Sequence record: MK268344.1
DNA length: 64,000 nt
Strand: one strand, 5' to 3'
Part shown: positions 2,404 to 49,020 of the stretch, piece after piece
How the letters are laid out: each line of letters opens with the position of its first letter
Position numbering within the stretch: the first letter of the stretch is position 1
Position numbers and translations under genes: made by a program
The notes under the pieces: model-generated
Told to the model about the DNA's origin: nothing
The model's input: only the letters and a program-made list of their open reading frames with translations
Database searches by the model: none

Positions 2404-2718
2404 ATGGAATATTTAAACGAAGACAATTTTAAAGACCTTGATAAATTCATCAAGGATTGCACAGATACCTCAGCAGCAATTGGTAATCTAGATGAAGTAA
2501 CTGCATCGATTGATGGTATGTTTATGATCCCAATTCGCCCTAGTACTGTTTATGTTGGGGAATTACATACTAATCCTGAAACTACTCTTGAGGATTATGA
2601 AGAGTATTTGTCTCAGGGTGTAGAGTTAACGGAAGAAGAATATGCACATTACCAAGTACTTTTAAATGAATGTGAAAATAATTTAAAAGAAATTAAAAAA
2701 ACTTGGGACAAACAGTAA
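2404..2718 (+). CDS. hypothetical acidic protein
   Basis: GGAG RBS, intact ORF. Confidence 0.75.
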   Translation: MEYLNEDNFKDLDKFIKDCTDTSAAIGNLDEVTASIDGMFMIPIRPSTVYVGELHTNPETTLEDYEEYLSQGVELTEEEYAHYQVLLNECENNLKEIKKTWDKQ

Positions 2719-2733
2719 AAAATGTGATATAAT
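2703..2733 (+). promoter_or_regulatory. phage promoter class TGGGAC-N18-TATAAT (drives ncRNA/tRNA-Ser)
   Basis: TTGGGACAAA...TGTGATATAAT. Confidence 0.75.
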
Positions 2734-2765: not shown

Positions 2766-2908
2766 TGGATTCATACAGCAAACATTATTCAAATATATGA
2801 TGTATGTTATACCTTCGGGTATATAACGCTGGTAACGTGCGGAAAATTACGTTAACCTTATAGGTGAAAGATGCAGAGGCGGCCTATATTGTATTCATAA
2901 TGAATCCA
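2766..2908 (+). ncRNA. ACAGCAA closed-stem RNA, long copy
   Basis: TGGATTCA/TGAATCCA terminal stem, TACAGCAA right after 5' arm, internal hairpins incl. GTTATAC-CTTCGG-GTATATAAC. Confidence 0.55.
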
Positions 2909-2918
2909 GTTTTAGGTA

Positions 2919-3010
2919 GGTAGGTTGGTCGAGTTGGTTTATGGCTCTAGTCTTGAAAACTAGCGACGGTTAATAGCCGTCCGTGGGTTCGAATCCCACA
3001 CCTACCTCCA
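2919..3010 (+). tRNA. tRNA-Ser(TGA)
   Basis: GGTAGGT/ACCTACC acceptor, CTAGT-CTTGAAA-ACTAG anticodon arm, long variable arm, GTTCGAATC, CCA. Confidence 0.95.
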
Positions 3011-3063
3011 CGGTATCCAACAGCAATTAAAATTTCATGCTTAGAAAACCAAAAGGATTCCCG
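3011..3063 (+). ncRNA. ACAGCAA closed-stem RNA, short copy
   Basis: CGGTATCC-AACAGCAA...GGATTCCCG, imperfect terminal stem. Confidence 0.5.
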
Positions 3064-3065
3064 TT

Positions 3066-3461
3066 ATGTCATTTGATGATTTTGAAGTACACGCAAGACG
3101 TGAAATCCAAAATTATCTGGATGGAACGAATAGAGATTCTCGGTATTATGAAGTTCAATATAACCAAGTACTTAAACTTGAATGGACTTCTAAGCCAGAT
3201 ACTTCAGATGAAAAACTAATTATGTTTAATATTACATTGGAAAAGAACTTAAGTACGGTTCATTTCTCATTGCAAATAGATTATACATATGGTGAAGACG
3301 AAGATAATTTTTACACCGCAGGAAGAACAGATCTTCCACATAGTGAAGAAGAATATTTTCAAATGAGTACAGTACACGATTTAGGTTTCCGGTGGGAATT
3401 CTATCAGTACTTACTAAGTGTCTTCGAGCAGTTAAGAAAGAGAAATGGAAAAGAAACGTGA
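3066..3461 (+). CDS. EEEYFQ-family hypothetical protein
   Basis: SEEEYFQMSTVHDLGF motif. Confidence 0.75.
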   Translation: MSFDDFEVHARREIQNYLDGTNRDSRYYEVQYNQVLKLEWTSKPDTSDEKLIMFNITLEKNLSTVHFSLQIDYTYGEDEDNFYTAGRTDLPHSEEEYFQMSTVHDLGFRWEFYQYLLSVFEQLRKRNGKET

Positions 3462-4056
3462 TAGGAGGGCATATCAGAAAGAATGGTATGCCAAGAATAA
3501 AGAAAAGCATAGTGCAAATACACGAAAGAATCACAAAAATCAAAAGATTGAGGTTCTTGAACATTATGGTGGAAAATGTGCGTGTTGTGGTGAGAGTCAA
3601 ATTGATTTTTTAGCAATTGACCATATAGACGGTGGTGGCAATGAACACCGCCGGGAATTAGGAATTTCAAACGGGACTAGCTTTTACTCATGGTTGAAGC
3701 GTGAAAACTTCCCACCCGGATTCCAAGTTCTATGTCATAATTGCAATTTTTCCAAACATATAAATGATGGAGAATGTATCCATCAAATTTTAAGTAAAAG
3801 GTTGACAATGAATACAAACTTAGAAACAATTGCAGTACATGCACAAGGTATTATTGACGCAACTGTTAATATGCCAGAGCAGTATGCTCAAAAGATCGAA
3901 GAACTAGCAGCAACCATTCTTTCAGTTGCAGCAATGGCAGAAGGTGTACATACACAAACTGTTAGTACAGCAGACTTTGTAGAAGGTCGTAATGAATTAG
4001 GCAATGGGATCATTGCTCATAAAGAGAATGGTACTATTAGACTAGAACGCGAATAA
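3445..4056 (+). CDS. HNH-type endonuclease, in frame with a downstream 82-aa domain (internal start 3808)
   Basis: CACC...AIDHIDGGG...QVLCHNCN zinc/HNH pattern; second half MNTNLETIAV... unrelated in composition. Confidence 0.75.
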   Translation: MEKKRDRRAYQKEWYAKNKEKHSANTRKNHKNQKIEVLEHYGGKCACCGESQIDFLAIDHIDGGGNEHRRELGISNGTSFYSWLKRENFPPGFQVLCHNCNFSKHINDGECIHQILSKRLTMNTNLETIAVHAQGIIDATVNMPEQYAQKIEELAATILSVAAMAEGVHTQTVSTADFVEGRNELGNGIIAHKENGTIRLERE

Positions 4057-4076
4057 CTAAATATTTGTGAGGAAAT

Positions 4077-4373
4077 ATGTCAGTACACAAAGAGTTAGTA
4101 AAGAAACTTGAAGAAGTACTTGAAGTAGTTAAACCGCTTCCTCAAGGTTATCAATATAAGGTACGTGAATTATGTGCTTGTATTGAAACTGTAGTATCCA
4201 TGTATGATGATGTACAGAAGGGTATTATTCCTGAAGTACTGATTAAAATGCGTGAAGGTACTTTAGAAGATGAAGTACCACAAGAAGAACAAAAAGTAGT
4301 TGATACTGCTCCTGAAGAATCTCCCGCAATAGAGTCGAAAAAGAAACTTCAGATTGGTGATATCAAACTATAA
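4077..4373 (+). CDS. hypothetical protein
   Basis: GAGG RBS, intact ORF. Confidence 0.75.
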   Translation: MSVHKELVKKLEEVLEVVKPLPQGYQYKVRELCACIETVVSMYDDVQKGIIPEVLIKMREGTLEDEVPQEEQKVVDTAPEESPAIESKKKLQIGDIKL

Positions 4374-4380
4374 ATAAATT

Positions 4381-4438
4381 TAGAATCTTACAGCAAATCT
4401 TATAAAATACATTTGGCGTAATTAAAAAATAGATTCTA
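4381..4438 (+). ncRNA. ACAGCAA closed-stem RNA, short copy
   Basis: TAGAATCT-TACAGCAA...AGATTCTA. Confidence 0.55.
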
Positions 4439-4446
4439 GTAAAAAC

Positions 4447-4497
4447 GAAATCCAACAGCAATTCATTTTTTTCGGTATAAAAACAACAATGGATTTC
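4447..4497 (+). ncRNA. ACAGCAA closed-stem RNA, short copy
   Basis: GAAATCCA-ACAGCAA...TGGATTTC. Confidence 0.55.
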
Positions 4498-4502
4498 AGT
4501 AT

Positions 4503-4580
4503 CGGTGTGTAGCTCAGTTTGGTAGAGTGTATCGTTCGGGGCGATAAAGTCGGCGGGTTCGAATCCTCCCACACCGACCA
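4503..4580 (+). tRNA. tRNA-Pro(CGG)
   Basis: CGGTGTG/CACACCG acceptor, TATCG-TTCGGGG-CGATA, GTTCGAATC, CCA. Confidence 0.95.
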
Positions 4581-4637
4581 CTATATCATAATACTCCTTT
4601 AATGTAGTATTTTATGAAAAAATAATTTAAAAACAAG

Positions 4638-4666
4638 TTGACGATTATGTGAAAACATGGTCTAAT
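4638..4666 (+). promoter_or_regulatory. sigma70-type promoter for tRNA cluster
   Basis: TTGACG-17 nt-TCTAAT. Confidence 0.55.
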
Positions 4667-4677
4667 ACATAAATCGG

Positions 4678-4762
4678 GGGTCGTTGGCTGAGAGGGTAAG
4701 CGACGGACTGTTAATCCGTGTCATAAATGACTAGGCAGGTTCGATACCTGCACGACCCGCCA
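4678..4762 (+). tRNA. tRNA-Asn(GTT) with long variable arm
   Basis: GGGTCGT/ACGACCC acceptor, G73, ACGGA-CTGTTAA-TCCGT, variable hairpin GTCA-TAAA-TGAC, CCA. Confidence 0.9.
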
Positions 4763-4767
4763 CCTTT

Positions 4768-4843
4768 AGTCCTATAGTTTCAGCGGTAAAAATACTCCCC
4801 TGTCACGGGAGAGTCACGGGTTCGAATCCCGTTAGGACTGCCA
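4768..4843 (+). tRNA. tRNA-Asp(GTC)
   Basis: AGTCCTA/TAGGACT acceptor, CTCCC-CTGTCAC-GGGAG, CCA. Confidence 0.95.
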
Positions 4844-4845
4844 AT

Positions 4846-4923
4846 GCGTCGTTAGCTCAGTTGGTAGAGCACCGGACTTTTAATCCGGGTGTCGCTTAGG
4901 TTCGAATCCTGCACGGCGTACCA
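4846..4923 (+). tRNA. tRNA-Lys(TTT)
   Basis: GCGTCGT/ACGGCGT acceptor, CCGGA-CTTTTAA-TCCGG, CCA. Confidence 0.93.
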
Positions 4924-4924
4924 T

Positions 4925-4999
4925 ACTCCATTCGTCTATCGGTTAGGACGTTGGGTTTTCAACCCAAAAAGATCAGTTCAATTCTGTTATGGAGTACCA
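4925..4999 (+). tRNA. tRNA-Glu(TTC)
   Basis: ACTCCAT/ATGGAGT acceptor, TTGGG-TTTTCAA-CCCAA, CCA. Confidence 0.92.
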
Positions 5000-5003
5000 C
5001 AAT

Positions 5004-5134
5004 GTATAGAATCAGCAATCTATATATAACGATATTAGAGCGTCTAGGAGCATAATATCTGCATATATAGTGAGTGGGATTGATAAGAGGTTGATCGCTC
5101 TTTGATGTGGGTTCGATTCCTACTCTATATACCA
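5004..5134 (+). ncRNA. 131-nt tRNA-like RNA with long inserted hairpin
   Basis: GTATAGA/TCTATAT acceptor + ACCA, T-arm GTGGG-TTCGATT-CCTAC, CTATATAT...ATATATAG insert in D region, TCAGCAA after 5' arm. Confidence 0.6.
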
Positions 5135-5153
5135 CACCTTATACGAGGTACTT

Positions 5154-5651
5154 ATGAAAGAACTAATTAAACAAAAATGTATGTTCGAGTTATTAAGTAC
5201 TGAAATCAATTCGGGTATAGTACTTGATGAACCAGAATGTTGGCTTCGAGATTACTATGACGAACCATTTACCGTTCCCATCGATTCATATATGGATGAT
5301 TATTGTACTACAATATTTCCAGATGAAGTCCATTTATTCACAAATAATTTTCATTTTATACATTACCCAAGTACTAAAGAAATCCGCATATATCTTATGT
5401 TCCATTTCAATACTAGTGAATATGGTGTTCCACCTGAATATTATAGAGACGAATTACATGACAACATGGAATCATGTATTGCAATTAACTCGAACGGGTT
5501 TTGGTTCAGCGATGAGAATTACACATACAGTACTGAAGAAGAGATATTCCAGTTGTCCTGTACTGAATTGGGGTTTTACATTGATATAGTAGAACGTGCT
5601 AAAGAATTCATTTATGCGGAGATACAAAACCGTGAATGTAGAGAAGTATAG
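5154..5651 (+). CDS. EEEYFQ-family hypothetical protein
   Basis: GAGG RBS; TEEEIFQLSCTELGF. Confidence 0.75.
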   Translation: MKELIKQKCMFELLSTEINSGIVLDEPECWLRDYYDEPFTVPIDSYMDDYCTTIFPDEVHLFTNNFHFIHYPSTKEIRIYLMFHFNTSEYGVPPEYYRDELHDNMESCIAINSNGFWFSDENYTYSTEEEIFQLSCTELGFYIDIVERAKEFIYAEIQNRECREV

Positions 5652-6039
5652 AGATTTTTTAAAATACATGATTCATGCAGAAGATTTGAAGATTTCAGTA
5701 CTAGATGGTATTATGCACATTAACGTAGGAACACTACGTACTAATAGTATTGAAATAAACAACAATTATAATACAATTTCTATGTATGATTTAGAATGGG
5801 TAAGGGAAGAATCAAAAGAATTTACTAACAGTTCCACATCGATGTTAAGGGCTGTATTAAAAAATGCATCACCTCCTAAATTGGAATTCTATATTCCAAT
5901 ATCACAGGAAGATGAGTTTCAACAAAGTACTGCACGATTGGGATATATCCTACCGTATTCATTAGTACCATATGTTGATGAACTAATAAAACGTGTTCAT
6001 GATATAGTTGATGATTTTTATATTAAAGGAAGAGATTAA
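5596..6039 (+). CDS. EEEYFQ-family hypothetical protein (start uncertain)
   Basis: SQEDEFQQSTARLGY. Confidence 0.7.
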   Translation: MLKNSFMRRYKTVNVEKYRDFLKYMIHAEDLKISVLDGIMHINVGTLRTNSIEINNNYNTISMYDLEWVREESKEFTNSSTSMLRAVLKNASPPKLEFYIPISQEDEFQQSTARLGYILPYSLVPYVDELIKRVHDIVDDFYIKGRD

Positions 6040-6040
6040 T

Positions 6041-6301
6041 ATGAAAGATATAAACGGTATTGAAATTACAGTTGGATGTACTTTAATGTTTGCTGAACGT
6101 GAACCAGACAGGTGGAATCCACGTGATATGGTTTTCCATAAAGTTTCTAAAATAGATCCTGCTTTTGGTGGTCGTATTATTTTTGAAGATCAAAATCAAA
6201 ATAGTATCGCATACAAGCAAAATATCACAACTCTACGTGTTGTTTCAGACGGATTTGTTGAGGCTTGGAAAAGTGGTGAATTGTTTACGAGGGAATTCTA
6301 A
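6041..6301 (+). CDS. hypothetical protein
   Basis: AGGAAG RBS; YopX-like start MKDINGIEITVG. Confidence 0.7.
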   Translation: MKDINGIEITVGCTLMFAEREPDRWNPRDMVFHKVSKIDPAFGGRIIFEDQNQNSIAYKQNITTLRVVSDGFVEAWKSGELFTREF

Positions 6302-6540
6302 TGAGTAAGTACTTTGTACGTTATAGCTACGATGTAACTAATAAGGTTCAACGTGGCGATGGTCTAGGTTGGGATTATGAAACCGATAAAGTAACAGACT
6401 GTTGTGTTTGTGAAATCTCAGAAGAACGTATTGACATTTCTGAAGTACGTGATTACATTCTTTCATACGAAGTAAATTATTTGGGCGATCGAAAGCCTGA
6501 TGCTTATGATATTGACATATTGGTACTAAACAAACTATGA
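6301..6540 (+). CDS. hypothetical protein
   Basis: TAATG coupling. Confidence 0.7.
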   Translation: MSKYFVRYSYDVTNKVQRGDGLGWDYETDKVTDCCVCEISEERIDISEVRDYILSYEVNYLGDRKPDAYDIDILVLNKL

Positions 6541-6710
6541 TTAACTATATTTTTCGTGTAAATGGTGAAGGTATCGTTCCCGGTTTAACTGTTGTTCGTG
6601 CATATACCGTAACTGATGCTCTTGAAATGTTACGTGACGAATTCACTAATCCTGATAACATTTCAATCAAACTTGTTGAATGTACTCAAGAGTTATCATT
6701 TTTAAACTAG
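6537..6710 (+). CDS. hypothetical 57-aa protein (not in ORF track)
   Basis: ATGA coupling; MINYIFRVNGEGIVPGL...QELSFLN fills gap. Confidence 0.6.
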   Translation: MINYIFRVNGEGIVPGLTVVRAYTVTDALEMLRDEFTNPDNISIKLVECTQELSFLN

Positions 6711-6716
6711 GACATA

Positions 6717-6977
6717 TTGATGATTAAAGGTAACTTCTATAATGATCTACGCATTCGCTACTTGGAAATATTAGATACTAGAGCAGAGAATGATACAGAC
6801 CATCCGACATCAAGGCATCATTTATCATGGATGCTTAATGAATTATCATCTGATACAATGTCAGAAACCAAGAAACATCGGTGGCTTGGGTATGTTCAAG
6901 GTTGTATGGTGTCACAAAACCTTATTAATGTTGAAGATGAGCGTAATGCAACTCGAAATATTTTTAACGGAAAATGA
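6717..6977 (+). CDS. small conserved-looking phage protein (HRWLGYVQG motif)
   Basis: AGGA RBS; HLSWM...KKHRWLGYVQG...EDERNATR. Confidence 0.7.
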   Translation: MMIKGNFYNDLRIRYLEILDTRAENDTDHPTSRHHLSWMLNELSSDTMSETKKHRWLGYVQGCMVSQNLINVEDERNATRNIFNGK

Positions 6978-6997
6978 TAAAATCTTGGGATAAAATC

Positions 6998-7028
6998 TTG
7001 GGACAAAATCACATTTATGTGATATAAT
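6998..7028 (+). promoter_or_regulatory. phage promoter class TGGGAC-N18-TATAAT
   Basis: TTGGGACAAA...TGTGATATAAT, preceded by 13-bp tandem duplication TAAAATCTTGGGA. Confidence 0.75.
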
Positions 7029-7048
7029 ATAGATACAAGAGGAACGAT

Positions 7049-7264
7049 ATGAAGATTAAAGATTTACGGTCTATTCTTGAACAGCATCCTGATGCAGAAA
7101 TTGTCATTCAGACCACACCTTATGATGATTATTCATTAGGAGATTGTGGTACAGCACATTTTTATAAAGCTGGGGATTTAGTCTTTGAACGTGGTGAAAG
7201 CCTAACGGAATTCATTGATGTTGAATTGAGTACAGCCCTTGTCGATATAATCGTTCTATCATAA
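7049..7264 (+). CDS. hypothetical protein
   Basis: GAGGA RBS. Confidence 0.7.
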   Translation: MKIKDLRSILEQHPDAEIVIQTTPYDDYSLGDCGTAHFYKAGDLVFERGESLTEFIDVELSTALVDIIVLS

Positions 7265-7297
7265 TTGTAAAATTGCTAATTGGAGAAACCAAAGAAT

Positions 7298-7879
7298 ATG
7301 AAGCTAAGTCTACGTAAAGCACATCGTCTAGTTAAAGATCTACAGAACCACCTAAGCGTTCGTGATCAACCTCAAACCATCCACCACAGTGCTGATGAGC
7401 AAGAGATTCTAGACACTATCGATCTTGTTGAATCACGTAATGCAGAAGCAGTATACACTGCACTACACGTGGTTGAAGCTATCAGTGCAATTCGTGCTGG
7501 CGTTCAAGCGTTGAATGCGAAAGAAGTAGACGGTGATAGCGTTGATTCTTTGTTGAATAAAAAAGTTCAAATTGAATCCAAAATGCGTGTACTAGCAGCA
7601 TTTGCTGTTGCACCAAAAGATACTCAGGAGAAGCGTGTACTTTCTATTAAACGTCAAGTACAAGACGCAGCATCTAACGCAGGTCAGATGTACTCCAATA
7701 GTGATGTTGTTGTTCGTGGTCAGAGTATCAGTACTCAACAACATCTAAATGATCTTTATGTTGCACTAAAACAGGAACAAGAAGTAGTTAGTGATAAACT
7801 AGCTTATATCAACAATCTACTACAAGTAGAGATTGATGATAGCTACGCTGACTTGTTCAAGAAACTACAAGTTCTATAA
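7298..7879 (+). CDS. coiled-coil protein, possibly DIP1984-like
   Basis: MKLSLRKAHRL... helical heptad pattern, IQxxN-like and C-terminal NxxxxVEI-like motifs; followed by structured intergenic region. Confidence 0.7.
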   Translation: MKLSLRKAHRLVKDLQNHLSVRDQPQTIHHSADEQEILDTIDLVESRNAEAVYTALHVVEAISAIRAGVQALNAKEVDGDSVDSLLNKKVQIESKMRVLAAFAVAPKDTQEKRVLSIKRQVQDAASNAGQMYSNSDVVVRGQSISTQQHLNDLYVALKQEQEVVSDKLAYINNLLQVEIDDSYADLFKKLQVL

Positions 7880-7902
7880 GGTCGCTTAACGGCTGACCAC
7901 CT

Positions 7903-8345
7903 TACCGATAGAGCAATCGAAAAGCTATTTTTCGATACTACATGGTATGAAATGTTACTTTGAAAAAAGACATTTTATAAACAAAAGAGTTTGCTCCGTA
8001 AGAGATGACAGATAATTAATCTTGCTTGGTTGTGGAAACGGTATAACTCGATTGCTCAGTTGAATGGTTGAAGTGTTGCATTGTTGCTTCGCTCTATCGG
8101 TACGTATTTTGGCTACGCTTTGATGTAAATAAAGTGTAGCACTTTTTAAGTAAAATAAAATATTAAATCTGTGCGGTTGTAACCAGTACTGGAATTATAC
8201 TTAGGGAAGTAGTGATCCAATAGTACCAGTAGTATTAGGACTTTCACGAGGCCAGCACGAATAGGATCACAACCTATTCGTACACGTAGAGTTGGCATAA
8301 AACGGGTAAGTAGTCATTTACTGGTTAAGGTGGCCTTACATTCAG
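7903..8345 (+). ncRNA. structured intergenic region, candidate ncRNA(s)
   Basis: No ORF over ~470 nt; TACCGATAGAGC(7903-7914) pairs with GCTCTATCGGTA(8091-8102); GAGCAATCGA/TCGATTGCTC; GCTACGCTTT/AAAGTGTAGC; CGAATAGG/CCTATTCG. Confidence 0.5.
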
Positions 8346-8356
8346 GAACTAAAACT

Positions 8357-8432
8357 GCGTCTATCGTATAGTGGCCTAATATCACTGGTTTCCACCCAGT
8401 AGACCGGGATTCGAATTCCCGTAGACGCTCCA
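8357..8432 (+). tRNA. tRNA-Gly(TCC)
   Basis: GCGTCTA/TAGACGC acceptor, U73, ACTGG-TTTCCAC-CCAGT, CCA. Confidence 0.93.
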
Positions 8433-8482
8433 CTTTATAAAAGGAGACAAACATGAAGTTTTCCTTACAGGTTGGGAAGTAC

Positions 8483-8488
8483 TAAATA
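8483..8488 (+). promoter_or_regulatory. putative late promoter TAAATA
   Basis: TAAATA 25 nt upstream of ART gene; same core as T4 late promoter TATAAATA. Confidence 0.45.
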
Positions 8489-8512
8489 CTCATAGAATCC
8501 TAAGAGGACAAT

Positions 8513-9205
8513 ATGATGAATTTAAAAGAATTACAAGAATCAATCTCTTCCATAATGGAAGGGAAAATCGGAACCTTCTATCATGGAAGTACTTCAAACA
8601 TTAAAAGTTTTGTTGATGACTTCGTAGGTAAAGGAAACGATGAATATGGCCCCGGAATATACTTCTCGAATAGAGAATGGATTGCGAGGGGTTATGCCGA
8701 ACCTAACGGCTATATATATCGCTGTGATTTAGATTTTAGGAATGAATTAAGTGCTAACACTAAGTTCAATTTAGATCACATTAAAACATTAATTGCTAAA
8801 TCACCGGATGAATACGCAGCTACTAATTGGGATGAGGACGAAGCGAAAGCACATCGTATCGCATTGCAAAATTATCTAGATTCGTATGATCATAATATGC
8901 TGGAGATTTTTATGCAAATTTGGGCAGATTGGTACATGGACTATCCGGTTGATTTTGTTCGCAATATAGTTGCTATGGGGTATGATGGTTCGGTACACAA
9001 TCTAGGTAATCCAGATGTGGATGGTATTACGGATGACACGTTGTATATTGTTGTCTATAATCCAAAATCAATTAAATTAATTGAATCATATCCTTACCAA
9101 CAAACGGTAGAAAAACCTAAAGAACCCGAAAAGGTTCAACCACATACATTTGTGACAAACTCACATGGTAGTGATGATATCCCTCTCCAAACTACCAAAT
9201 CTTAA
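8513..9205 (+). CDS. ADP-ribosyltransferase-fold protein
   Basis: FYHGST...GPGIYFS...IARGYA...GYIY and YDG...YIVVYNP, H-type ART motifs; GAGG RBS. Confidence 0.65.
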   Translation: MMNLKELQESISSIMEGKIGTFYHGSTSNIKSFVDDFVGKGNDEYGPGIYFSNREWIARGYAEPNGYIYRCDLDFRNELSANTKFNLDHIKTLIAKSPDEYAATNWDEDEAKAHRIALQNYLDSYDHNMLEIFMQIWADWYMDYPVDFVRNIVAMGYDGSVHNLGNPDVDGITDDTLYIVVYNPKSIKLIESYPYQQTVEKPKEPEKVQPHTFVTNSHGSDDIPLQTTKS

Positions 9206-9227
9206 TGCATACGCATTATGTCTTTTT

Positions 9228-9262
9228 GCCGATAGTATTATCATCTACTATCGGCTTTTTTT
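9228..9262 (+). terminator. intrinsic terminator
   Basis: GCCGATAGTA...TACTATCGGC-TTTTTTT. Confidence 0.8.
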
Positions 9263-9289
9263 CATCCTAATTAATAGGAGTACAAAAAA

Positions 9290-9781
9290 ATGACAACTGA
9301 AAAATTTGTTCAGTACTTTTTGAATATCATCAATGTAAATAAAACATTTGATTTAGATACTTGGTTAGATACTTCTGGCTATCCAAAACTGTATGAAGGT
9401 GGTGTAATCAAAAGTACTTTACCCTTGAAAAAAGGAGTATTACCACAATCCCTGTTCATTGCTGGCAAAAGAAATTTATTCATGGGTATTATGGATTATG
9501 ATGATGCACATGATCATGATGTTGATTTAAATTATGATTTCCAAACCCAAGTACTAACAATTAATTTCACTGATATTACAACTCATAATGATGCATATGC
9601 AGAAGATGAGAACATGAATGACTATACTCTTAATGTGAAACTATTCGATGATGACGGTGAATTCTTTCAAGAGAATACAGTAACTGATTTACCATTTGAA
9701 TTTGAAGTACAAAAGAAAATGAAAGTATTCTTTGATGCTATGTATGATGGTTTCTGCAATAAGAAGGTATTAATAAAATGA
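9290..9781 (+). CDS. EEEYFQ-family hypothetical protein (divergent)
   Basis: AGGAG RBS; DDGEFFQENTVTDLPF. Confidence 0.7.
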   Translation: MTTEKFVQYFLNIINVNKTFDLDTWLDTSGYPKLYEGGVIKSTLPLKKGVLPQSLFIAGKRNLFMGIMDYDDAHDHDVDLNYDFQTQVLTINFTDITTHNDAYAEDENMNDYTLNVKLFDDDGEFFQENTVTDLPFEFEVQKKMKVFFDAMYDGFCNKKVLIK

Positions 9782-10260
9782 ATAATAAAATATATGTCAT
9801 GCCTGATAAAGTTCTTGAATTAATTTGGGAAAAGGTTGAGTACTATAAGGCATTGGAAATACTTTCATATGACCAAGTTGTTTTTAACAATCGTGGTGTG
9901 AATAATGAGATTTATACCAGTAAGAAGTTTCAAGACTTAGAATGTTTCCAGAATCCAAAAACAGGTGAATATAGCATTACAATACTAAGTAATGCACTAA
10001 TGGAACTGTACTTCTTTGCAAATCAACTAACAGAAGAACCTGATAATGGTTATTATCTAGAAATAGAGTATAGATATAATACAAATTGGGCACGAATGGC
10101 TACACACATTTATGAGTCAGAAGAAGAGTACTTTATGCAAAGTACTGTAGAAAATTTACAACTAAGTATCGACCGTAATTTTAAAGTTGCTAGCTTTATG
10201 GCACAACTTAAAGAGTTGATCAGATTGAGGGCTATTGAACATGGAAAATCAACATCGTAA
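9778..10260 (+). CDS. EEEYFQ-family hypothetical protein
   Basis: SEEEYFMQSTVENL; ATGA coupling. Confidence 0.75.
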   Translation: MNNKIYVMPDKVLELIWEKVEYYKALEILSYDQVVFNNRGVNNEIYTSKKFQDLECFQNPKTGEYSITILSNALMELYFFANQLTEEPDNGYYLEIEYRYNTNWARMATHIYESEEEYFMQSTVENLQLSIDRNFKVASFMAQLKELIRLRAIEHGKSTS

Positions 10261-10465
10261 AATCAAAGGTTATCGAGAGCTAACCGAAGATGAAATTAAA
10301 AACATGAATGATGTTAAAGAGCTTGCTGCACAAGTTGGTGAACTAATTGAACGGCTAGGGGATTCCCCTGATATCGACCGGCGTTGGTTGAATATCGCTA
10401 AGACCGATTTACAAAAAGGTTTTATGAGTGCTGTACGCAGCATTGCAAAACCAGATTCATTCTAA
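10241..10465 (+). CDS. acb2: Acb2-family anti-CBASS cyclic-nucleotide sponge
   Basis: MENQHRKIKGYRELT-x-DEI-x-MNxVK...RWLNIAKTDLQKGFMSAVRSIAKP matches the Acb2/T4 Vs.4 family N- and C-terminal motifs. Confidence 0.85.
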   Translation: MENQHRKIKGYRELTEDEIKNMNDVKELAAQVGELIERLGDSPDIDRRWLNIAKTDLQKGFMSAVRSIAKPDSF

Positions 10466-10477
10466 GGAGCATAATAT

Positions 10478-11119
10478 ATGCAAATGGACGACAACTTACC
10501 CGAAATGTTTGGGAATACTGAACTATCAGACGCTGATAAAAAACTACTAGCTGAACTAGATGCTATTGATATTAACAGTACTGATATGGTAGAATTTACG
10601 GATGATGATCTCGTTAAAAACGCATATCTACTAGGAACCATGTCTAAGATTCATGGACATGCGAACAATGTAAACTGTGCATCATATACTTACGTAATTA
10701 ATGTATACATTAAAGATGCAGTTTGTAGTACTTATAACTGTACACGTGTTTATGAGTTTGGGGAACCCGTAGAACATACACTATTGAAACTTTTTGCAAA
10801 ACAAAAATTCTATCTACGTAGTTCTACATCATCTTTTGGTGCAAAAGAATTCACACATCCACATCTTGAACTTGAACAACGTGCCGTGTTTGTGTATGAT
10901 CTAATCACAGATGAAAACTTTGATATAGATAAACCTTTCTATTTCTATCCACGCGAACTACAACTAGAACCGTGGAGTGTTAAAGAAGAAGAATGGTCAA
11001 CCGTTGCAAAGCCTGGATATCATGAACTATTACCGGGTAATAAAATGCTACCACTAAAACCAACCTCACCACATAGCATAGTTGGTTCTTATATGGTTCC
11101 AGACGAAATCTTAAAATAA
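10478..11119 (+). CDS. hypothetical protein
   Basis: AAGGAG RBS. Confidence 0.75.
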   Translation: MQMDDNLPEMFGNTELSDADKKLLAELDAIDINSTDMVEFTDDDLVKNAYLLGTMSKIHGHANNVNCASYTYVINVYIKDAVCSTYNCTRVYEFGEPVEHTLLKLFAKQKFYLRSSTSSFGAKEFTHPHLELEQRAVFVYDLITDENFDIDKPFYFYPRELQLEPWSVKEEEWSTVAKPGYHELLPGNKMLPLKPTSPHSIVGSYMVPDEILK

Positions 11120-11122
11120 GAC

Positions 11123-11161
11123 TTGACCACCGACCTTCACTGATGTATCATTAGTGAAGGT
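11123..11161 (+). promoter_or_regulatory. sigma70-type promoter with palindrome over -10
   Basis: TTGACC-17-TATCAT; ACCTTCACT...AGTGAAGGT inverted repeat spans -10. Confidence 0.55.
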
Positions 11162-11189
11162 TTTTAATTGAGAATTTGATGGAGGGGAA

Positions 11190-11675
11190 ATGAAATTTGA
11201 TCCAGAAAGGTTATTACTGTTATTGCAAGTTCTATCTATCCCAACAAATACAGGTATGGTTAGTTTCAATCCAGTAAAGCCAATGAATCTTAAAAATGGA
11301 GATTCAGTTAAATACCCTTGTATGTTATTTGGTATCAACAAATCTCATAATTTTACTTGTACTGACATGTATTGCATGTTGATTGTAAAAAATGATTCAA
11401 CATCAGATTATTGTTGTACTTGGTGGTTTACTAACGATAAGTTCATGTTATCCATTATTGATAATGATGATAACGAAGATCCAGAAATGACAAGAAATAT
11501 TTCTGATACTGTGGCTATGGGTAATTTCCATAAATCAGAAGAAGAACATTTTCAAAAAGATTGTTTATCAGGAACTCCTATTACTTGGGAACTTGAGGTG
11601 GCAGTGAAAGAATGTCTTTCTAATCTAAAATCTTTTTATAATGCAGCATTAGCCGAATGGAATGGTGTACTATGA
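11190..11675 (+). CDS. EEEYFQ-family hypothetical protein
   Basis: GGAGG RBS; SEEEHFQKDCL. Confidence 0.75.
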   Translation: MKFDPERLLLLLQVLSIPTNTGMVSFNPVKPMNLKNGDSVKYPCMLFGINKSHNFTCTDMYCMLIVKNDSTSDYCCTWWFTNDKFMLSIIDNDDNEDPEMTRNISDTVAMGNFHKSEEEHFQKDCLSGTPITWELEVAVKECLSNLKSFYNAALAEWNGVL

Positions 11676-12118
11676 ACACAACATTAATAAGACCTGAAGT
11701 ACTGAAACATGTAAAGGGAAGATATAAGGGAATTTCCAAAAATGATTTAAATTCATTTCCAGAAACCGAATTACTTGATAGTGAACAATTACTTTCTTAC
11801 GGGGATCAAAATCACGGTTATTACTTTGACTTAGGTATTGATATGGGTAGTAACGAGGAAATTGGTTTTGAAGGTTCAATCACTCAATTTGAATTCAAAC
11901 TGGTTGAGTACACGCAAATTGACACTAAACCAAATTCGTTTAAGATTGATTTAACTTTATTTGATGGGGCATTAACCGAAGAAGTCTTTTTTCAATTCAG
12001 TACTATAGAAGATTTTTATGGCTTGACATTCGAACAGCTTCGGGTTATCATAGAAATACGGGATGAAATTAAAAATCGCATTCCTCATTGGGGTATTAAT
12101 CCTAAAGAAAAACTTTAA
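11672..12118 (+). CDS. EEEYFQ-family hypothetical protein
   Basis: TEEVFFQFSTIEDFYGL; ATGA coupling. Confidence 0.75.
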   Translation: MNTTLIRPEVLKHVKGRYKGISKNDLNSFPETELLDSEQLLSYGDQNHGYYFDLGIDMGSNEEIGFEGSITQFEFKLVEYTQIDTKPNSFKIDLTLFDGALTEEVFFQFSTIEDFYGLTFEQLRVIIEIRDEIKNRIPHWGINPKEKL

Positions 12119-12122
12119 AAAG

Positions 12123-12153
12123 TTGGGACAAACTTAGAAAAATGTGATATGAT
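12123..12153 (+). promoter_or_regulatory. phage promoter class TGGGAC-N18-TATGAT
   Basis: TTGGGACAAA...TGTGATATGAT. Confidence 0.7.
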
Positions 12154-12191
12154 ATTATTATCAGGACAGTAAGATATTCTGGTAAAATTTC

Positions 12192-12270
12192 GTTGAGTAG
12201 CTTAAGAGAGAGCAGCAGGTAATAACGATAAGATCACCTGTCAGCGTGGATTTAAACACCACCTCAACAA
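12192..12270 (+). pseudogene. degenerate tRNA-like element with 15-nt anticodon loop, no CCA
   Basis: GTTGAG/CTCAAC acceptor, TAGCT D-arm start, CAGGT/ACCTG arm, GTGG...CCAC T-like arm. Confidence 0.45.
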
Positions 12271-12277
12271 TTCAATT

Positions 12278-12332
12278 TAGAATCCAACAGCAATTTTATT
12301 CAATCGCTTATATGAAAACAAAATGGATTCTA
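12278..12332 (+). ncRNA. ACAGCAA closed-stem RNA, short copy
   Basis: TAGAATCCA-ACAGCAA...TGGATTCTA. Confidence 0.55.
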
Positions 12333-12337
12333 GCTTT

Positions 12338-12420
12338 GCGGGTATGGGGGAACTGGTAGACCCGACGTGCTTAAAACACGTTTCGCAAGAGTGAGGATTC
12401 GAATTCCTCTACCCGCACCA
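12338..12420 (+). tRNA. tRNA-Leu(TAA)
   Basis: GCGGGTA/TACCCGC acceptor, ACGTG-CTTAAAA-CACGT, variable arm, CCA. Confidence 0.95.
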
Positions 12421-12485
12421 CATTTTAATAGTATAATTGATTCGAACTCATAAATAATGGTATATACCATAACTAAGGTTCGAAA

Positions 12486-13298
12486 ATGAGAAAAGACATA
12501 TTACAACAAAAAGAATTAATTCTTCAATTAATAGAAAAGAAAGCCCCTAAAAATGAGATTTGTAGAATTTTAAATTGTAAAACTACTACATTGGATTCAT
12601 ATCTAAAGAAAATGAATATTGAATATTCTGGTAACAAATCCAGAAAAGGGTTACAGAGAACTGAAAATTATAAAAATGTTGAAGAGTACCTATTCAATGG
12701 TAGTTCGATTCAATCTCATAAATTGAAATTGAAATTAATACGAGAAAATATATTTGAACATAAATGTCATAGATGTGGATTGCGTGAATGGGAAGGTGTA
12801 GAAATTCCATTAGAATTAGATCATATCGATGGTCAACATTTTAATAATGAACTATCAAACCTTAGATTATTATGTCCAAATTGTCATGCGTTAACTGATA
12901 CATACAGGTCAAAAAACCGAAGAACTGTTAGAACTAAAAAAGAAATAGAATCATTGGCAGAAGAAGTGTTTACGCGATTTGCTGATGATATAGAGAACAA
13001 TTCTATTGAGAAAGAATCAAAAGAAAAGAAACGAAAGATTACTAATATATGTAAAACATGTAATAAATCATATGAAAAATGTGGTAACATGAAAGGTAAG
13101 TATTTTTGCAGTGATGAATGTTATCGAAAATCATTACAAAAATTTGATATTACGTCAGAAGAATTAAGTAAATTAGTTTGGGAAATGCCTACTACTAAAA
13201 TAGCAGAAATATATAATGTTAGTGATGTTGCAATTTCTAAACGTTGTAAAAAATACGGTATTAAGAAACCACCACGTGGTTATTGGATGAAAAAATGA
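12486..13298 (+). CDS. HNH homing endonuclease
   Basis: CHRC...LELDHIDG...NNELSNLRLLCPNCHA; flanking HTH-like and Cys (CKTC...FCSDEC) DNA-binding modules; sits directly after tRNA-Leu. Confidence 0.88.
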   Translation: MRKDILQQKELILQLIEKKAPKNEICRILNCKTTTLDSYLKKMNIEYSGNKSRKGLQRTENYKNVEEYLFNGSSIQSHKLKLKLIRENIFEHKCHRCGLREWEGVEIPLELDHIDGQHFNNELSNLRLLCPNCHALTDTYRSKNRRTVRTKKEIESLAEEVFTRFADDIENNSIEKESKEKKRKITNICKTCNKSYEKCGNMKGKYFCSDECYRKSLQKFDITSEELSKLVWEMPTTKIAEIYNVSDVAISKRCKKYGIKKPPRGYWMKK

Positions 13299-16020: not shown

Positions 16021-16265
16021 ATATGAAAACCGATAAAGCTATTGAAAAGATGCGTCGTAATAAGCGTAATTGGACTATCCCTAAACTGAAAGTAATCGCC
16101 GCACGTTGTGGTATTTCGTGCGTGTCGAATGGTAGTACTCATCACGTTTTCAGGTTAGAGGGTGTTGTAGAACATTTGTCAATTCCATTCAATGGTAAGG
16201 ACATTCACCCTGATTATATAACTAAATTTCTACGCCTAATAGATAAGGCAACAGGAGAGAAGTAA
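16017..16265 (+). CDS. hicA: HicA-family mRNA interferase (dsRBD-like), no adjacent HicB
   Basis: DKAIEKMRRN...W...L...GI...GSTHHVF...LSIP...IHPDYITKFL; GAGGT RBS (ATG 16023). Confidence 0.7.
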   Translation: MNMKTDKAIEKMRRNKRNWTIPKLKVIAARCGISCVSNGSTHHVFRLEGVVEHLSIPFNGKDIHPDYITKFLRLIDKATGEK

Positions 16266-46627: not shown

Positions 46628-46638
46628 TTTATTTCTCC

Positions 46639-49010: not shown

Positions 49011-49020
49011 CCCCTTCTCC

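What the first reader, a model, noticed from the sequence alone, without database searches (positions are those of the whole stretch)
2766..12332. Five-copy family of closed-stem ACAGCAA RNAs interleaved with tRNA genes
Seen: copies at 2766-2908, 3011-3063, 4381-4438, 4447-4497 and 12278-12332. Each has a terminal stem that varies in sequence but keeps pairing (TGGATTCA/TGAATCCA, TAGAATCT/AGATTCTA, GAAATCCA/TGGATTTC, TAGAATCCA/TGGATTCTA). An invariant [AT]ACAGCAA sits just 3' of the 5' arm, and the short copies have a central weak hairpin and an A-rich 3' linker. Every copy lies next to a tRNA or another copy. The central loops of the two copies before tRNA-Pro contain TGG and CGG, and the copy after tRNA-Ser contains GCT, which may be chance. 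Inference: small RNAs released by tRNA processing, possibly protein-binding decoys (e.g. for anticodon nucleases) or Y-RNA-like ligands of a Ro60/TROVE RNA-repair protein.
Basis: partly seen in the sequence, partly recalled or inferred. Interest (0 to 1): 0.78.

Follow-up and report, generated by a model that had tools for sequence, protein, structure and literature searches.

The report
Phage Y-RNA-like small RNAs, Ro-like partner
The five elements are real members of an uncatalogued family of small structured phage RNAs that look like the partner "Y RNAs" of a divergent Ro60-like protein, and they closely resemble the unexplained Class I RNAs of social amoebae.

Summary
The window is Salmonella jumbo phage Munch. 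All five copies exist at the stated coordinates. Each has an 8-10 bp terminal helix, single-stranded [A/U]ACAGCAA just 3' of the 5' arm, and an A-rich 3' linker. The helix covaries (8 of 9 pairs compensatory; 0/500 shuffles). No Rfam family reaches threshold.

The family is far larger than five copies. It recurs in tRNA islands of Rak2-like jumbo phages, and with quite different stems in Felixounavirus, Listeria P100-like, Campylobacter and uncultured phages. Long relatives enclose a YrlA-type permuted-tRNA domain inside the same module.

Every examined carrier lineage whose full genome was searchable encodes a DUF2828/DUF7788 protein. The Munch copy is predicted to have the full-length Ro60 fold. 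In five lineages the RNAs lie about 20 nt to 6 kb from that gene on the same strand.

Best explanation: these are Y-RNA-like ligands of a divergent Ro60-like protein, co-transcribed with tRNAs and released by tRNA processing. Binding is inferred, not shown. The anticodon-nuclease decoy idea gets no support.

The motif, stem position, length and end sequences also match Dictyostelium Class I RNAs, but only below Rfam's threshold.

The parts
2705..2733 (+). sigma-70-like promoter (GGGACA-17-TATAAT with TG) that would start the c1/tRNA-Ser transcript near 2740
   Evidence: Consensus scan scored 10 of 12. The same motif recurs at 2346 and 12125. This is a consensus match only; function was not tested.
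2766..2908 (+). c1, long member (143 nt). It has a 9-bp terminal helix and UACAGCAA. The interior forms four hairpins, one capped by UUCG.
   Evidence: Fold energy -38.2 kcal/mol, z = -3.0. A syntenic orthologue sits upstream of tRNA-Ser(UGA) in Serratia phage BF. It shows a compensatory C-G to U-A change and the same four-hairpin layout. Model R1 does not detect c1, and it has no YrlA match.
2919..3010 (+). tRNA-Ser(UGA), flanked by c1 and c2. Its processing sites would define the 3' end of c1 and the 5' end of c2.
   Evidence: Called by ARAGORN and Rfam. The processing role is inferred.
3011..3063 (+). c2, short member, starting at the CCA end of tRNA-Ser. Its 3' arm AAGGAUUC also serves as the Shine-Dalgarno sequence of the ORF at 3066-3461.
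   Evidence: R1 scores 65.8 bits. In 5 of 6 family members with AAGGAUUC, an ORF of at least 118 aa starts directly after the element.
4381..4438 (+). c3, short member, first of a tandem pair.
   Evidence: R1 scores 63.4 bits. Weak Rfam match to RF01414 at 17.4 bits. The pair is conserved in 7t3, fENko-Kae01, L189 and L194.
4447..4497 (+). c4, short member, ending 5 nt before tRNA-Pro.
   Evidence: R1 scores 64.5 bits. The stem GAAAUCCA/UGGAUUUC carries two compensatory changes relative to c5.
4503..4580 (+). tRNA-Pro(CGG). RNase P cleavage here would give c4 its 3' end.
   Evidence: Called by ARAGORN and Rfam. The processing role is inferred.
12125..12153 (+). second copy of the GGGACA-17-TAT(G/A)AT promoter-like motif, upstream of the tRNA-like element, c5 and tRNA-Leu.
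   Evidence: Read directly from the sequence, by analogy with the sites found.
12192..12269 (+). tRNA-like cloverleaf with a 15-nt 'anticodon' loop, co-transcribed with c5. It is a neighbour, not a family member.
   Evidence: Fold result. The element is almost invariant in L055 and L161. Neither ARAGORN nor Rfam calls it.
12278..12332 (+). c5, short member, ending 5 nt before tRNA-Leu(UAA).
   Evidence: R1 scores 75.7 bits. Orthologues in L055 and L161 carry a compensatory A-U to G-C change. Weak RF01414 match at 17.7 bits.
12338..12420 (+). tRNA-Leu(UAA). RNase P cleavage here would give c5 its 3' end.
   Evidence: Called by ARAGORN and Rfam. The processing role is inferred.

Best explanation
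The five elements are small non-coding RNAs of a phage family built like Y RNAs.

- **Binding module.** The 5' and 3' ends pair into a short helix. Single-stranded (N)ACAGCAA follows the 5' arm directly, and an A-rich tract precedes the 3' arm. Together these form a conserved protein-binding module.
- **Variable interior.** It ranges from about 35 nt of A/U-rich loop to a complete permuted-tRNA (YrlA-type) domain.
- **Production (inferred).** The RNAs are transcribed from host-type early promoters together with the phage tRNAs. They are cut out by the tRNA-processing machinery. RNase P acts at the downstream tRNA. 3'-end processing of the upstream tRNA, or RNase E in the A/U-rich spacers, frees the other end.
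- **Partner (inferred).** The likely partner is the phage's own Ro60-fold protein of the DUF2828/DUF7788 family. In Munch this is CPT_Munch_210, MK268344 110426-111943, which lies outside the window next to an RNA ligase.
- **Function (by analogy with Ro60-Y RNA particles).** The RNA would gate or tether this ring-shaped protein. The complex would act in RNA surveillance, degradation or repair during infection.
- **The short Munch copies** are the binding module alone. Long copies in sister phages add a tRNA-like effector module.

Shown here: the RNA family and its helix, the fold-level Ro60 prediction, and the genomic linkage. Inferred: processing, binding and downstream function.
For: 1. **Real, selected + strand structure.** The helix is 92% paired with 8 of 9 pairs compensatory and 0/500 shuffles reaching this. 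RNAalifold agrees and finds 12 U-G pairs. The stems differ completely between lineages while ACAGCAA stays fixed: GGAAUCC, AGACCGA, UAGGAAGC, AUGGUACU, AGAAGACU, GGAUAGC.

2. **Modular Y-RNA architecture.** All four YrlA-like hits in jumbo phages are enclosed by the same helix plus AACAGCAA.
- BF L123:18814-18876, 40.3 bits, E 3e-7.
- GAP32-length contig L150:126-234, 44.7 bits, E 4e-9.
- L129:1624-1686, 36.2 bits.
- L181:5813-5871, 41.9 bits.

As a control, the accepted mycobacteriophage Bxz1 YrlA next to its Ro60 gene scores only 32.5 bits over the same model span. In canonical YrlA the Rsr-binding motif also sits at or just after the 5' strand of the terminal helix (PMC4201824).

3. **Ro60-fold partner.** CPT_Munch_210 matches DUF2828 (E 5e-34) and DUF7788 (E 8e-44).
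- Its AlphaFold model has pLDDT 87.6 and pTM 0.85.
- The eight best PDB matches are all Ro60, Rsr or TROVE over the full length. These are 2I91, 1YVR, 9KOP, 9NFA, 9NF8, 1YVP and 2NVO, with E from 8e-9 to 4e-6 and TM up to 0.59.
- The next matches are isolated vWA domains at E above 6e-3.
- The DxSxS MIDAS motif is invariant.

4. **Co-occurrence and linkage.** Homologues of this protein occur in 7t3, fHe-Yen9-04, BF, CBB and GAP32, the jumbo phages that carry the RNAs. In other lineages RNA and gene lie close together on the same strand.
- Felixounavirus EC6: gene 10354-11769, four elements at 12107-12875 inside the tRNA array.
- Listeria LP-083-2: three elements 74-337 nt upstream of the gene, which is followed by RtcB and an RNA ligase.
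- Campylobacter CP30A: two elements 22-172 nt upstream.
- L128 and L147: elements 2.2-5.7 kb downstream of the gene.

5. **Specificity.** Count of ACAGCAA sites with a closing stem of at least 7 bp:
- Controls: 0 of 9 in the Bxz1 Ro60 locus, 0 of 1 in BONAISHI, 0 of 2 in the T4 tRNA region.
- Carriers, on the tRNA strand: 9 of 10 in BF, 6 of 7 in L147, 3 of 3 in Listeria.

6. **Expression in a relative.** In Listeria phage CKA15, the most heavily transcribed unannotated regions lie within 2 kb upstream of the Rsr-like gene CKA15_055 on the same strand. The authors proposed Y RNAs (PMC12282133).

7. **Geometry fits tRNA-type processing.** 19 of 64 elements end 1-14 nt before a tRNA 5' end.
Against: - No binding or expression data exist for Munch.
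- In Munch and BF the Ro-like gene is about 160-200 kb from the RNAs, not adjacent.
- The canonical Rsr-binding motif GNCGAAN0-1G is absent.
- The protein has no sequence-level TROVE match. Profile comparison with Ro60 aligns only the MIDAS region at 53% probability. Homology therefore rests on a predicted fold with TM about 0.6.
- DUF2828 proteins are common in phages with tRNA arrays: 440 records. Part of the co-occurrence could simply reflect shared residence in tRNA islands.
- I did not run a genome-wide co-occurrence statistic. For L083 and L190/L172/L168 only parts of the contigs were held, so the gene's presence there is unknown.
- Some copies double as ribosome-binding sites. That points to an additional or alternative role in cis.
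- The mapping of the CKA15 transcribed regions onto the three LP-083-2 elements is by position only.
Confidence: 0.62

Rival explanations
1. The elements act in cis as punctuation within mixed tRNA-mRNA transcripts. After RNase P or tRNA 3'-end cleavage, the helix would cap the new mRNA end as a 3' or 5' stabiliser. Where the 3' arm is a Shine-Dalgarno sequence, it would gate translation. No dedicated Ro-like partner would be needed.
For: - The elements sit at junctions: ORF-to-tRNA, tRNA-to-ORF and ORF-to-ORF.
- In 5 of 6 elements reading AAGGAUUC, an ORF starts immediately downstream, so the helix would sequester the ribosome-binding site.
- In Munch the Ro-like gene is far away.
Against: - This does not explain a strictly conserved single-stranded CAGCA across lineages whose stems are unrelated.
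- It does not explain tandem copies such as c3-c4.
- It does not explain copies that follow a promoter with no ORF to protect, such as c1 and the BF array at 14.1-15.1 kb.
- It does not explain a whole YrlA-type domain nested in the same module.
- The helices are weak, about -5 to -10 kcal/mol, so they would make poor exonuclease barriers.
Confidence: 0.18
2. The RNAs are decoys or sponges for host RNA-targeting defence or toxin nucleases. Candidates include anticodon nucleases or sequence-specific mRNA interferases that cut ACA or GCA. Alternatively they could sponge Hfq through the A-R-N triplets AAC-AGC-AAU and the A-rich tract.
For: - The region is an accessory, counter-defence island. It holds an Acb2/Tad1-type protein at 10241-10465 and an ART-PolyVal protein at 8516-9205, alongside phage tRNAs.
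- The motif is single-stranded and contains ACA, GCA and two or three A-R-N triplets.
Against: - No copy mimics an anticodon stem-loop, and the tRNA-like relatives lack the anticodon arm.
- Invariance of CAGCA goes beyond what A-R-N binding would require.
- No defence-system RNA family in Rfam matches.
- This idea does not predict the tight linkage to the Ro-like gene seen in EC6, Listeria and Campylobacter phages.
Confidence: 0.07
3. The elements work at the DNA level. They could be repeats that mediate modular shuffling of tRNA and ORF cassettes (like T4 promoter-stem-loop cassettes or integron attC sites), or miniature mobile elements or homing sites.
For: - Copies lie at mosaic boundaries. 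The tRNA-Tyr cassette is present in 7t3 and fENko-Kae01 but absent in Munch. tRNA-Pro is replaced by an ORF in 7t3, with c3-c4 retained.
- HNH endonuclease genes are nearby.
Against: - U-G pairs are tolerated only on the tRNA strand: 12 sequences at one pair.
- All 64 copies are co-oriented with the tRNAs.
- Orthologous copies are syntenic and evolve by compensatory substitution rather than presence/absence with target duplications.
- There are no attC-type R boxes, and no integrase turned up in the regions I examined.
Confidence: 0.04

Closest known systems
Bacterial and phage Y RNAs of the YrlA type (Rfam RF02553) with Ro60/Rsr
   Same: - The terminal helix is formed by the two ends.
- A conserved protein-binding motif sits at the 5' side of that helix.
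- The architecture is modular, with a variable effector domain.
- In long relatives (BF, GAP32-type, EC6) that domain is a permuted tRNA: T arm, loop-capped acceptor, D arm. These score as well as an accepted phage YrlA.
- The RNAs are linked to a Ro60-fold gene on the same strand within a few kb in several phages, the criterion used in PMC4201824.
- RNA ligase or RtcB genes lie nearby.
   Different: - The motif is ACAGCAA, not GNCGAAN0-1G.
- The partner belongs to the DUF2828/DUF7788 family and has no sequence-level TROVE match.
- The Munch copies lack the tRNA-like domain.
- No copy reaches the Rfam gathering score.
- The RNAs are embedded in tRNA arrays.
- In jumbo phages the RNAs are unlinked from the protein gene.
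Dictyostelium Class I RNAs (Rfam RF01414)
   Same: - Length is 42-65 nt.
- A short helix joins the two ends.
- The conserved motif lies immediately 3' of the 5' arm. The Rfam consensus there is CCUUACAGCAA; c3 reads CUUACAGCAA.
- The interior is variable and A/U-rich, with an A-run before the 3' arm.
- The ends are conserved as AAG...CUGU (PMC7919456). L147 and L128 copies read AAGA/AAGG...UCUGU/CCUGU.
- RF01414 was the non-tRNA Rfam family that recurred, hitting three members at 17.4, 17.7 and 24.3 bits.
   Different: - All scores are far below the gathering score of 41.5, and E-values are 0.5-7.
- Class I RNAs are eukaryotic genes with a DUSE promoter.
- Their only shown direct binder is the RRM protein Rnp1A.
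- They were reported as restricted to dictyostelids.
- The Munch-type ends are UAG...CUAGU rather than AAG...CUGU.
- I could not test whether dictyostelids encode a DUF2828 protein.
Putative Y RNAs of Listeria phage CKA15 (P100-like), PMC12282133
   Same: - Highly transcribed unannotated regions lie just upstream of an Rsr-like gene, downstream of the tRNA array, on the same strand.
- In the related phage LP-083-2, that position holds three ACAGCAA elements.
   Different: - That paper defines no sequence or structure family.
- The correspondence is by position in a different isolate only.
- The host is Gram-positive.
T4 stable RNAs species 1 and 2 (rnaC, rnaD)
   Same: They are small stable RNAs of unknown function, encoded in a phage tRNA cluster and released by tRNA processing. 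rnaC carries a T arm.
   Different: They lack the terminal helix plus ACAGCAA module. The family model finds nothing there, and no ACAGCAA site has a closing stem.

Membership tests
Y RNA / YrlA (RF02553) | Terminal helix formed by the 5' and 3' ends | tested here: met
   8-10 bp helix in all five copies. Covariation counts; independent RNAalifold prediction.
Y RNA / YrlA (RF02553) | Ro/Rsr-binding motif GNCGAAN0-1G near the 5' end | tested here: not met
   (N)ACAGCAA occupies that position instead. The canonical motif is visible in Bxz1 YrlA and in the Rfam consensus.
Y RNA / YrlA (RF02553) | tRNA-like effector domain (T arm, loop-capped acceptor, D arm) | tested here: not met
   Absent from c2-c5. 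c1 has four hairpins but no YrlA match. The domain is present in long relatives in BF, L150, L129, L181 and EC6.
Y RNA / YrlA (RF02553) | Reaches the Rfam gathering score (69 bits) | tested here: not met
   No hit for the Munch copies. Long relatives score 36-45 bits. The accepted Bxz1 YrlA also scores only 32.5 bits.
Y RNA / YrlA (RF02553) | Encoded within about 4 kb of a Ro60 orthologue on the same strand | tested here: not met
   In Munch the Ro-like gene is about 177 kb away. For the family, with a DUF2828-type Ro-like gene, the criterion is met in EC6, LP-083-2, CP30A and L128. It is partly met in L147.
Y RNA / YrlA (RF02553) | Physically bound by Ro60/Rsr | not testable with these tools
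   Needs immunoprecipitation or gel-shift experiments.
Ro60/TROVE proteins (proposed partner, CPT_Munch_210) | Sequence match to TROVE or Ro60 | tested here: not met
   - tblastn with two phage Ro60 proteins found no enterobacterial jumbo phage.
- Pfam gives DUF2828 plus DUF7788 only.
- hhalign aligns only the MIDAS region.
- phmmer against PDB sequences finds nothing.
Ro60/TROVE proteins (proposed partner, CPT_Munch_210) | Helical-repeat ring plus C-terminal vWA domain with MIDAS | tested here: met
   The predicted structure has pLDDT 87.6. Its top eight PDB matches are all Ro60, Rsr or TROVE over the full length. DxSxS is invariant. This rests on a predicted model, not a solved structure.
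Dictyostelium Class I RNA (RF01414) | Short terminal stem, adjacent 11-nt motif CCUUACAGCAA, length 42-65 nt | tested here: inconclusive
   - Architecture and length are met.
- 7 to 10 of the 11 motif positions are identical.
- The AAG...CUGU ends are matched by L147 and L128 relatives and only partly by Munch.
- Scores are 17-24 bits against a gathering score of 41.5.
Dictyostelium Class I RNA (RF01414) | DUSE promoter about 60 nt upstream; dictyostelid genome | tested here: not met
   These are phage genes behind sigma-70-like promoters or inside tRNA operons.
T4 species 1/2 stable RNAs | Sequence or structure similarity to rnaC or rnaD | tested here: not met
   The model finds no match in the T4 tRNA region, and inspecting the sequence shows no module.

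The most novel reading that the evidence does not exclude
The phage ACAGCAA RNAs and the Dictyostelium Class I RNAs may be one RNA family, or convergent ligands of one protein family. If so, Class I RNAs, long of unknown function and thought unique to dictyostelids, would be Y-RNA-like partners of a DUF2828-type Ro60-like protein.

- One candidate partner is the uncharacterised DdR-21 pull-down protein DDB_G0281243. I did not examine that protein, so this is a guess.
- The same RNA-protein particle would then occur from phages of Gram-positive and Gram-negative bacteria to amoebae. It might extend to other eukaryotes that carry DUF2828.
Probability: 0.25. Interest if true: 0.92.

Novelty: new variant of a known kind. 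Interest (0 to 1): 0.8.

Why it matters
- **A missing RNA partner.** This would give a large, uncharacterised protein family its RNA ligand. DUF2828/DUF7788 has more than 7,600 relatives and occurs in 440 phage records. Carriers include Felixounavirus and P100-like phages used in biocontrol.
- **A wider Ro60-Y RNA system.** It would extend Ro60-Y RNA particles to many lytic phages in which sequence searches for Ro60 find nothing.
- **tRNA islands.** It suggests that phage 'tRNA islands' also house an RNA surveillance or repair particle.
- **Testable reagents.** It offers a defined 55-nt RNA, a 7-nt motif and a named protein for direct experiments.
- **A cross-kingdom lead.** It gives a concrete hypothesis for the Dictyostelium Class I RNAs, whose mechanism has been open since 2004.

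Tried and rejected
- **Rfam.** At gathering thresholds only tRNAs matched. Permissive scans added only sub-threshold RF01414 and, in relatives, YrlA.
- **Generic motif-plus-stem scan.** It has a high background: 32% of random 7-mers get a closing stem of at least 7 bp. I did not use it as evidence on its own.
- **14-mer scan of viral contigs.** It returned mostly chance hits. The c1-specific scan behaved the same way.
- **Ro60 by tblastn.** Two phage Ro60 queries were negative for these phages. That nearly led me to conclude 'no Ro'. The fold search later corrected this.
- **RtcB.** The E. coli RtcB search could not resolve Munch's status.
- **Neighbouring ORFs.** Pfam and PHROGs on about 45 window ORFs gave no RNA-binding candidate.
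- **Conserved neighbour gene.** Local BLAST found none shared across lineages.
- **T4 rnaC/rnaD.** Not the same family.
- **Model R1.** It is tuned to one arm sequence. It missed c1 and all EC6, Listeria and Campylobacter copies.
- **Central hairpin.** Not recovered by RNAalifold.
- **Ideas considered and dropped.**
  - Integron attC-like sites: no R boxes and no integrase.
  - Retron msr/msd: too small and no reverse transcriptase seen.
  - Functional permuted tRNA genes: no anticodon arm and no CCA.
  - K-turn: no tandem G-A pairs.
  - Pairing of the 3' arm with the T arm of the downstream tRNA: fails for L083 and BF.
  - ToxI-like antitoxin: no Rfam match.
- **Literature.** The primary paper on Class I RNA pull-downs is not in the library. 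Searches for DUF2828 and DDB_G0281243 were uninformative.

Full report
**Identity of the window.** The window is the last 64 kb of Salmonella phage Munch (MK268344.1, 350,103 bp). Window coordinate equals record coordinate minus 286,103. Munch is a Rak2-like jumbo myovirus. None of the five elements is annotated in the record.

- The four short copies align along their whole length (A1, A2). The consensus runs UUU(A/G)GAAUC(C/U), then (A/U)ACAGCAA, then about 25-35 nt of A/U-rich sequence. It ends with an A-run, U(A/G)GAUUC(U/C)AG(U).
- The 8-mer alone is not enriched: 9 found against 5.4 expected. A generic stem search has a high background. The case therefore rests on homology and covariation.

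**Evidence from the covariance model R1.**
- I built R1 from c2-c5.
- It finds orthologues in 7t3 and fENko-Kae01. It also finds 11 copies in 7 kb of the Serratia phage BF tRNA island, and copies in uncultured contigs.
- It finds nothing in the other 51 kb of the window or in 62 kb of other Munch DNA. It also finds nothing in the T4 tRNA region or around two canonical phage Ro60 genes.

**Covariation of the closing helix.**
- On 23 matches the helix is 92% paired.
- Eight of nine pairs show compensatory changes.
- None of 500 shuffles reached this, and slid registers gave 20-51% paired.
- RNAalifold on a MAFFT alignment of 59 short members predicts the same helix and nothing else. Its U-G pairs are compatible only with the + strand.

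**Caveats on individual copies.**
- c1 is a divergent long member that R1 misses.
- c1 has a syntenic BF orthologue upstream of tRNA-Ser(UGA). That orthologue shows a compensatory change and the same four-hairpin interior.
- c2 has an imperfect helix.

**Context.**
- All 64 distinct members found with R1 are co-oriented with tRNAs.
- 19 end 1-14 nt before a tRNA 5' end, and 5 start at a tRNA CCA end. The rest follow or precede ORFs or other copies.
- Where the 3' arm reads AAGGAUUC, an ORF starts immediately after it in 5 of 6 cases, including c2. The arm therefore doubles as a Shine-Dalgarno sequence.
- Munch has seven other tRNAs with no copy, and no copies outside window 2.7-12.4 kb in the 136 kb I examined.
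- Promoter-like sites of one type (GGGACA-17-TATAAT with TG) precede c1 and the c5 unit.

**First link to Y RNAs.**
- BF and other jumbo phages carry long copies of 115-135 nt. In these, the same helix plus AACAGCAA encloses a T arm, an acceptor-like helix capped by a tetraloop, and a D arm.
- Rfam scores these cores as YrlA: 36-45 bits, with E down to 4e-9 in a local search. That is below the 69-bit gathering score.
- All four such hits lie inside the module.
- The accepted YrlA of mycobacteriophage Bxz1, beside its Ro60 gene, scores only 32.5 bits over the same span.
- Published work describes YrlA as a Ro60-binding terminal module plus a permuted-tRNA effector module lacking a free CCA. The binding motif GNCGAAN0-1G lies near the 5' end (PMC4201824; bioRxiv 10.1101/312249).
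- The phage family has the same plan but a different motif.

**Finding the protein.**
- tblastn with Ro60 of Bxz1 and of Vibrio phage BONAISHI found about 357 phage records. None was an enterobacterial jumbo phage.
- Pfam and PHROGs on about 45 window ORFs gave no RNA-binding candidate.
- The lead came from uncultured contigs L128, L145 and L147. There a 593-aa ORF near the RNAs matches DUF2828 plus DUF7788.
- tblastn with that ORF hits 440 phage records. They include 7t3, fHe-Yen9-04, BF, CBB and GAP32, which are the jumbo phages that carry the RNAs.
- The Munch orthologue is CPT_Munch_210 (record 110426-111943). It matches DUF2828 at E 5e-34 and DUF7788 at E 8e-44. It sits near an Rnl2-type RNA ligase and a weak 2H-phosphoesterase match.

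**The protein has a Ro60 fold.**
- I modelled it with AlphaFold from a 35-sequence alignment with an invariant DxSxS. The model has pLDDT 87.6 and pTM 0.85.
- Its eight best PDB matches are all Ro60, Rsr or phage TROVE structures over the full length. E ranges from 8e-9 to 4e-6, with TM up to 0.59.
- Everything below those is an isolated vWA domain.
- Sequence methods do not see the relationship.

**Linkage in other phage lineages.** A stem-independent scan looked for ACAGCAA plus any closing helix of at least 6-7 bp.

| Phage | Ro-like gene | RNA elements | Relation |
|---|---|---|---|
| Felixounavirus EC6 | 10354-11769, 165 nt upstream of a 23-tRNA array | Three short copies and one long copy with a T arm, at 12107-12875; stems AGACCGN/NCGGUCU | Same strand, 0.3-1.1 kb downstream |
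| Listeria phage LP-083-2 | 5098-6621, followed by RtcB and an RNA ligase | Three elements | 74-337 nt upstream |
| Campylobacter phage CP30A | 5245-6627 | Two elements | 22-172 nt upstream |
| L147 and L128 | See | Six and three elements | 2-6 kb downstream of the gene |

- Stems differ completely between lineages, while ACAGCAA, the A-run and the end nucleotides persist.
- Controls: no ACAGCAA site in the Bxz1, BONAISHI or T4 loci has a closing stem. On the tRNA strand, 9 of 10 do in BF, 6 of 7 in L147 and 3 of 3 in Listeria.
- A multi-omics study of the P100-like Listeria phage CKA15 adds expression evidence. The most heavily transcribed unannotated regions lie within 2 kb upstream of the Rsr-like gene CKA15_055 on the same strand. 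The authors suggested Y RNAs without defining them (PMC12282133).

**Mechanism I commit to.** The RNAs are Y-RNA-like ligands of the DUF2828-type Ro60-like protein.
- They are made with the tRNAs and excised by tRNA processing.
- The helix plus ACAGCAA and the A-tract form the binding module. The interior is an optional effector module, tRNA-like in long members.
- By analogy with Ro60-Y RNA-PNPase particles, the complex would act in RNA surveillance, decay or repair during infection.
- The RNA structure, the fold prediction and the linkage are shown. Processing, binding and function are inferred. My confidence is about 0.6.
- A cis role in mRNA-end protection or translation control may coexist and is the main rival.
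- The decoy and DNA-repeat readings have little support.

**Dictyostelium resemblance.**
- RF01414 (Class I RNAs) was the one non-tRNA Rfam family that recurred among permissive hits: c3 at 17.4 bits, c5 at 17.7 and a BF copy at 24.3. Its gathering score is 41.5.
- Class I RNAs are 42-65 nt, with a short terminal stem, an 11-nt motif adjacent to the 5' arm and conserved ends AAG...CUGU (PMC7919456). The Rfam consensus line reads that motif as CCUUACAGCAA.
- c3 reads CUUACAGCAA. L147 and L128 copies begin AAGA or AAGG and end UCUGU or CCUGU.
- Four proteins were pulled down with DdR-21: GuaB, NdkC, Rnp1A/CIBP and the uncharacterised DDB_G0281243 (bioRxiv 10.1101/2020.04.05.026054).
- I could not determine whether dictyostelids encode a DUF2828 protein, or what DDB_G0281243 is.
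- This remains a lead, not a finding.

**Limits.**
- There are no expression or binding data for Munch.
- Homology of the protein to Ro60 rests on a predicted model.
- Co-occurrence was sampled, not tested genome-wide.
- The IMG/VR members were retrieved with an arm-specific pattern. Conservation of those arm positions in that subset is therefore partly by construction.
- I could not determine whether Munch has RtcB.

Noticed in passing
window 12192-12269 (+): A tRNA-like cloverleaf with a 15-nt 'anticodon' loop lies between a promoter-like site and c5. Neither ARAGORN nor Rfam calls it. It is almost invariant in L055 and L161, although the flanking proteins there are only 30-60% identical.
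   Followed up: partly
window 5004-5135 (+): A roughly 130-nt tRNA-like element sits directly after tRNA-Glu. It has a 7-bp acceptor, a T arm and an encoded CCA, with a long interior. ARAGORN does not call it. It is also present in 7t3.
   Followed up: no
window 10241-10465 (+): A 74-aa protein matches the Acb2/Tad1 hairpin domain (Pfam E 4e-19), the cyclic-nucleotide sponge family that counters CBASS and Thoeris. It is conserved in L055 (79%) and BF (74%).
   Followed up: no
window 8516-9205 (+): An ART-PolyVal ADP-ribosyltransferase-domain protein (Pfam E 1e-10) lies just after tRNA-Gly.
   Followed up: no
window 45497-63669 (-): An array of at least 13 paralogous genes encodes proteins of about 375-400 aa. 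The three I scanned carry RCC1-like repeats.
   Followed up: partly
window 16023-17500 (+) and 26207-27175 (+): Three further genes: a weak HicA-like 80-aa protein (below Pfam threshold), then a BCS1_N plus AAA ATPase, and a sigma-70 region 2/3 protein.
   Followed up: no
MK268344 108904-112551 (outside the window; L218:5905-9552): An RNA-repair-like cluster: an Rnl2-type RNA ligase with an OB domain, the Ro60-fold DUF2828/DUF7788 protein, and a weak 2H-phosphoesterase match. The 7t3 orthologue is annotated 'structural protein'. The Listeria CKA15 orthologue was detected in virions (PMC12282133), so the protein may be packaged.
   Followed up: partly
L002 (7t3) 4971-5704; L003 (fENko-Kae01) 13685-13759; window 4503-4580: The slot after the c3-c4 pair holds different cargo in close relatives. 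Munch has tRNA-Pro(CGG), fENko-Kae01 has a different tRNA-Pro(UGG), and 7t3 has a 220-aa ORF with no tRNA. The RNA pair itself is retained in all three.
   Followed up: partly
L195:1680-2054 (-); L123 (BF) 9421-10143 (+): Proteins with the cREC_REC domain (cyclic-phosphate processing receiver, Pfam E 1e-21) lie in the same tRNA islands. BF has two tandem paralogues just upstream of an annotated pseudo-tRNA.
   Followed up: no
L055:4290-4400 (-); L161:2990-3090 (+): Relatives carry an additional conserved, apparently non-coding segment upstream of the tRNA-like element, containing AGCGAAGG. Munch has a promoter and a small hairpin in its place.
   Followed up: no
window 4678-4999 (+): The tRNA-Asn-Asp-Lys-Glu block is 86-96% identical to tRNA clusters of about 170-kb Enterobacter, Klebsiella and Salmonella phages. 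This suggests exchange of tRNA cassettes between unrelated phage families.
   Followed up: no
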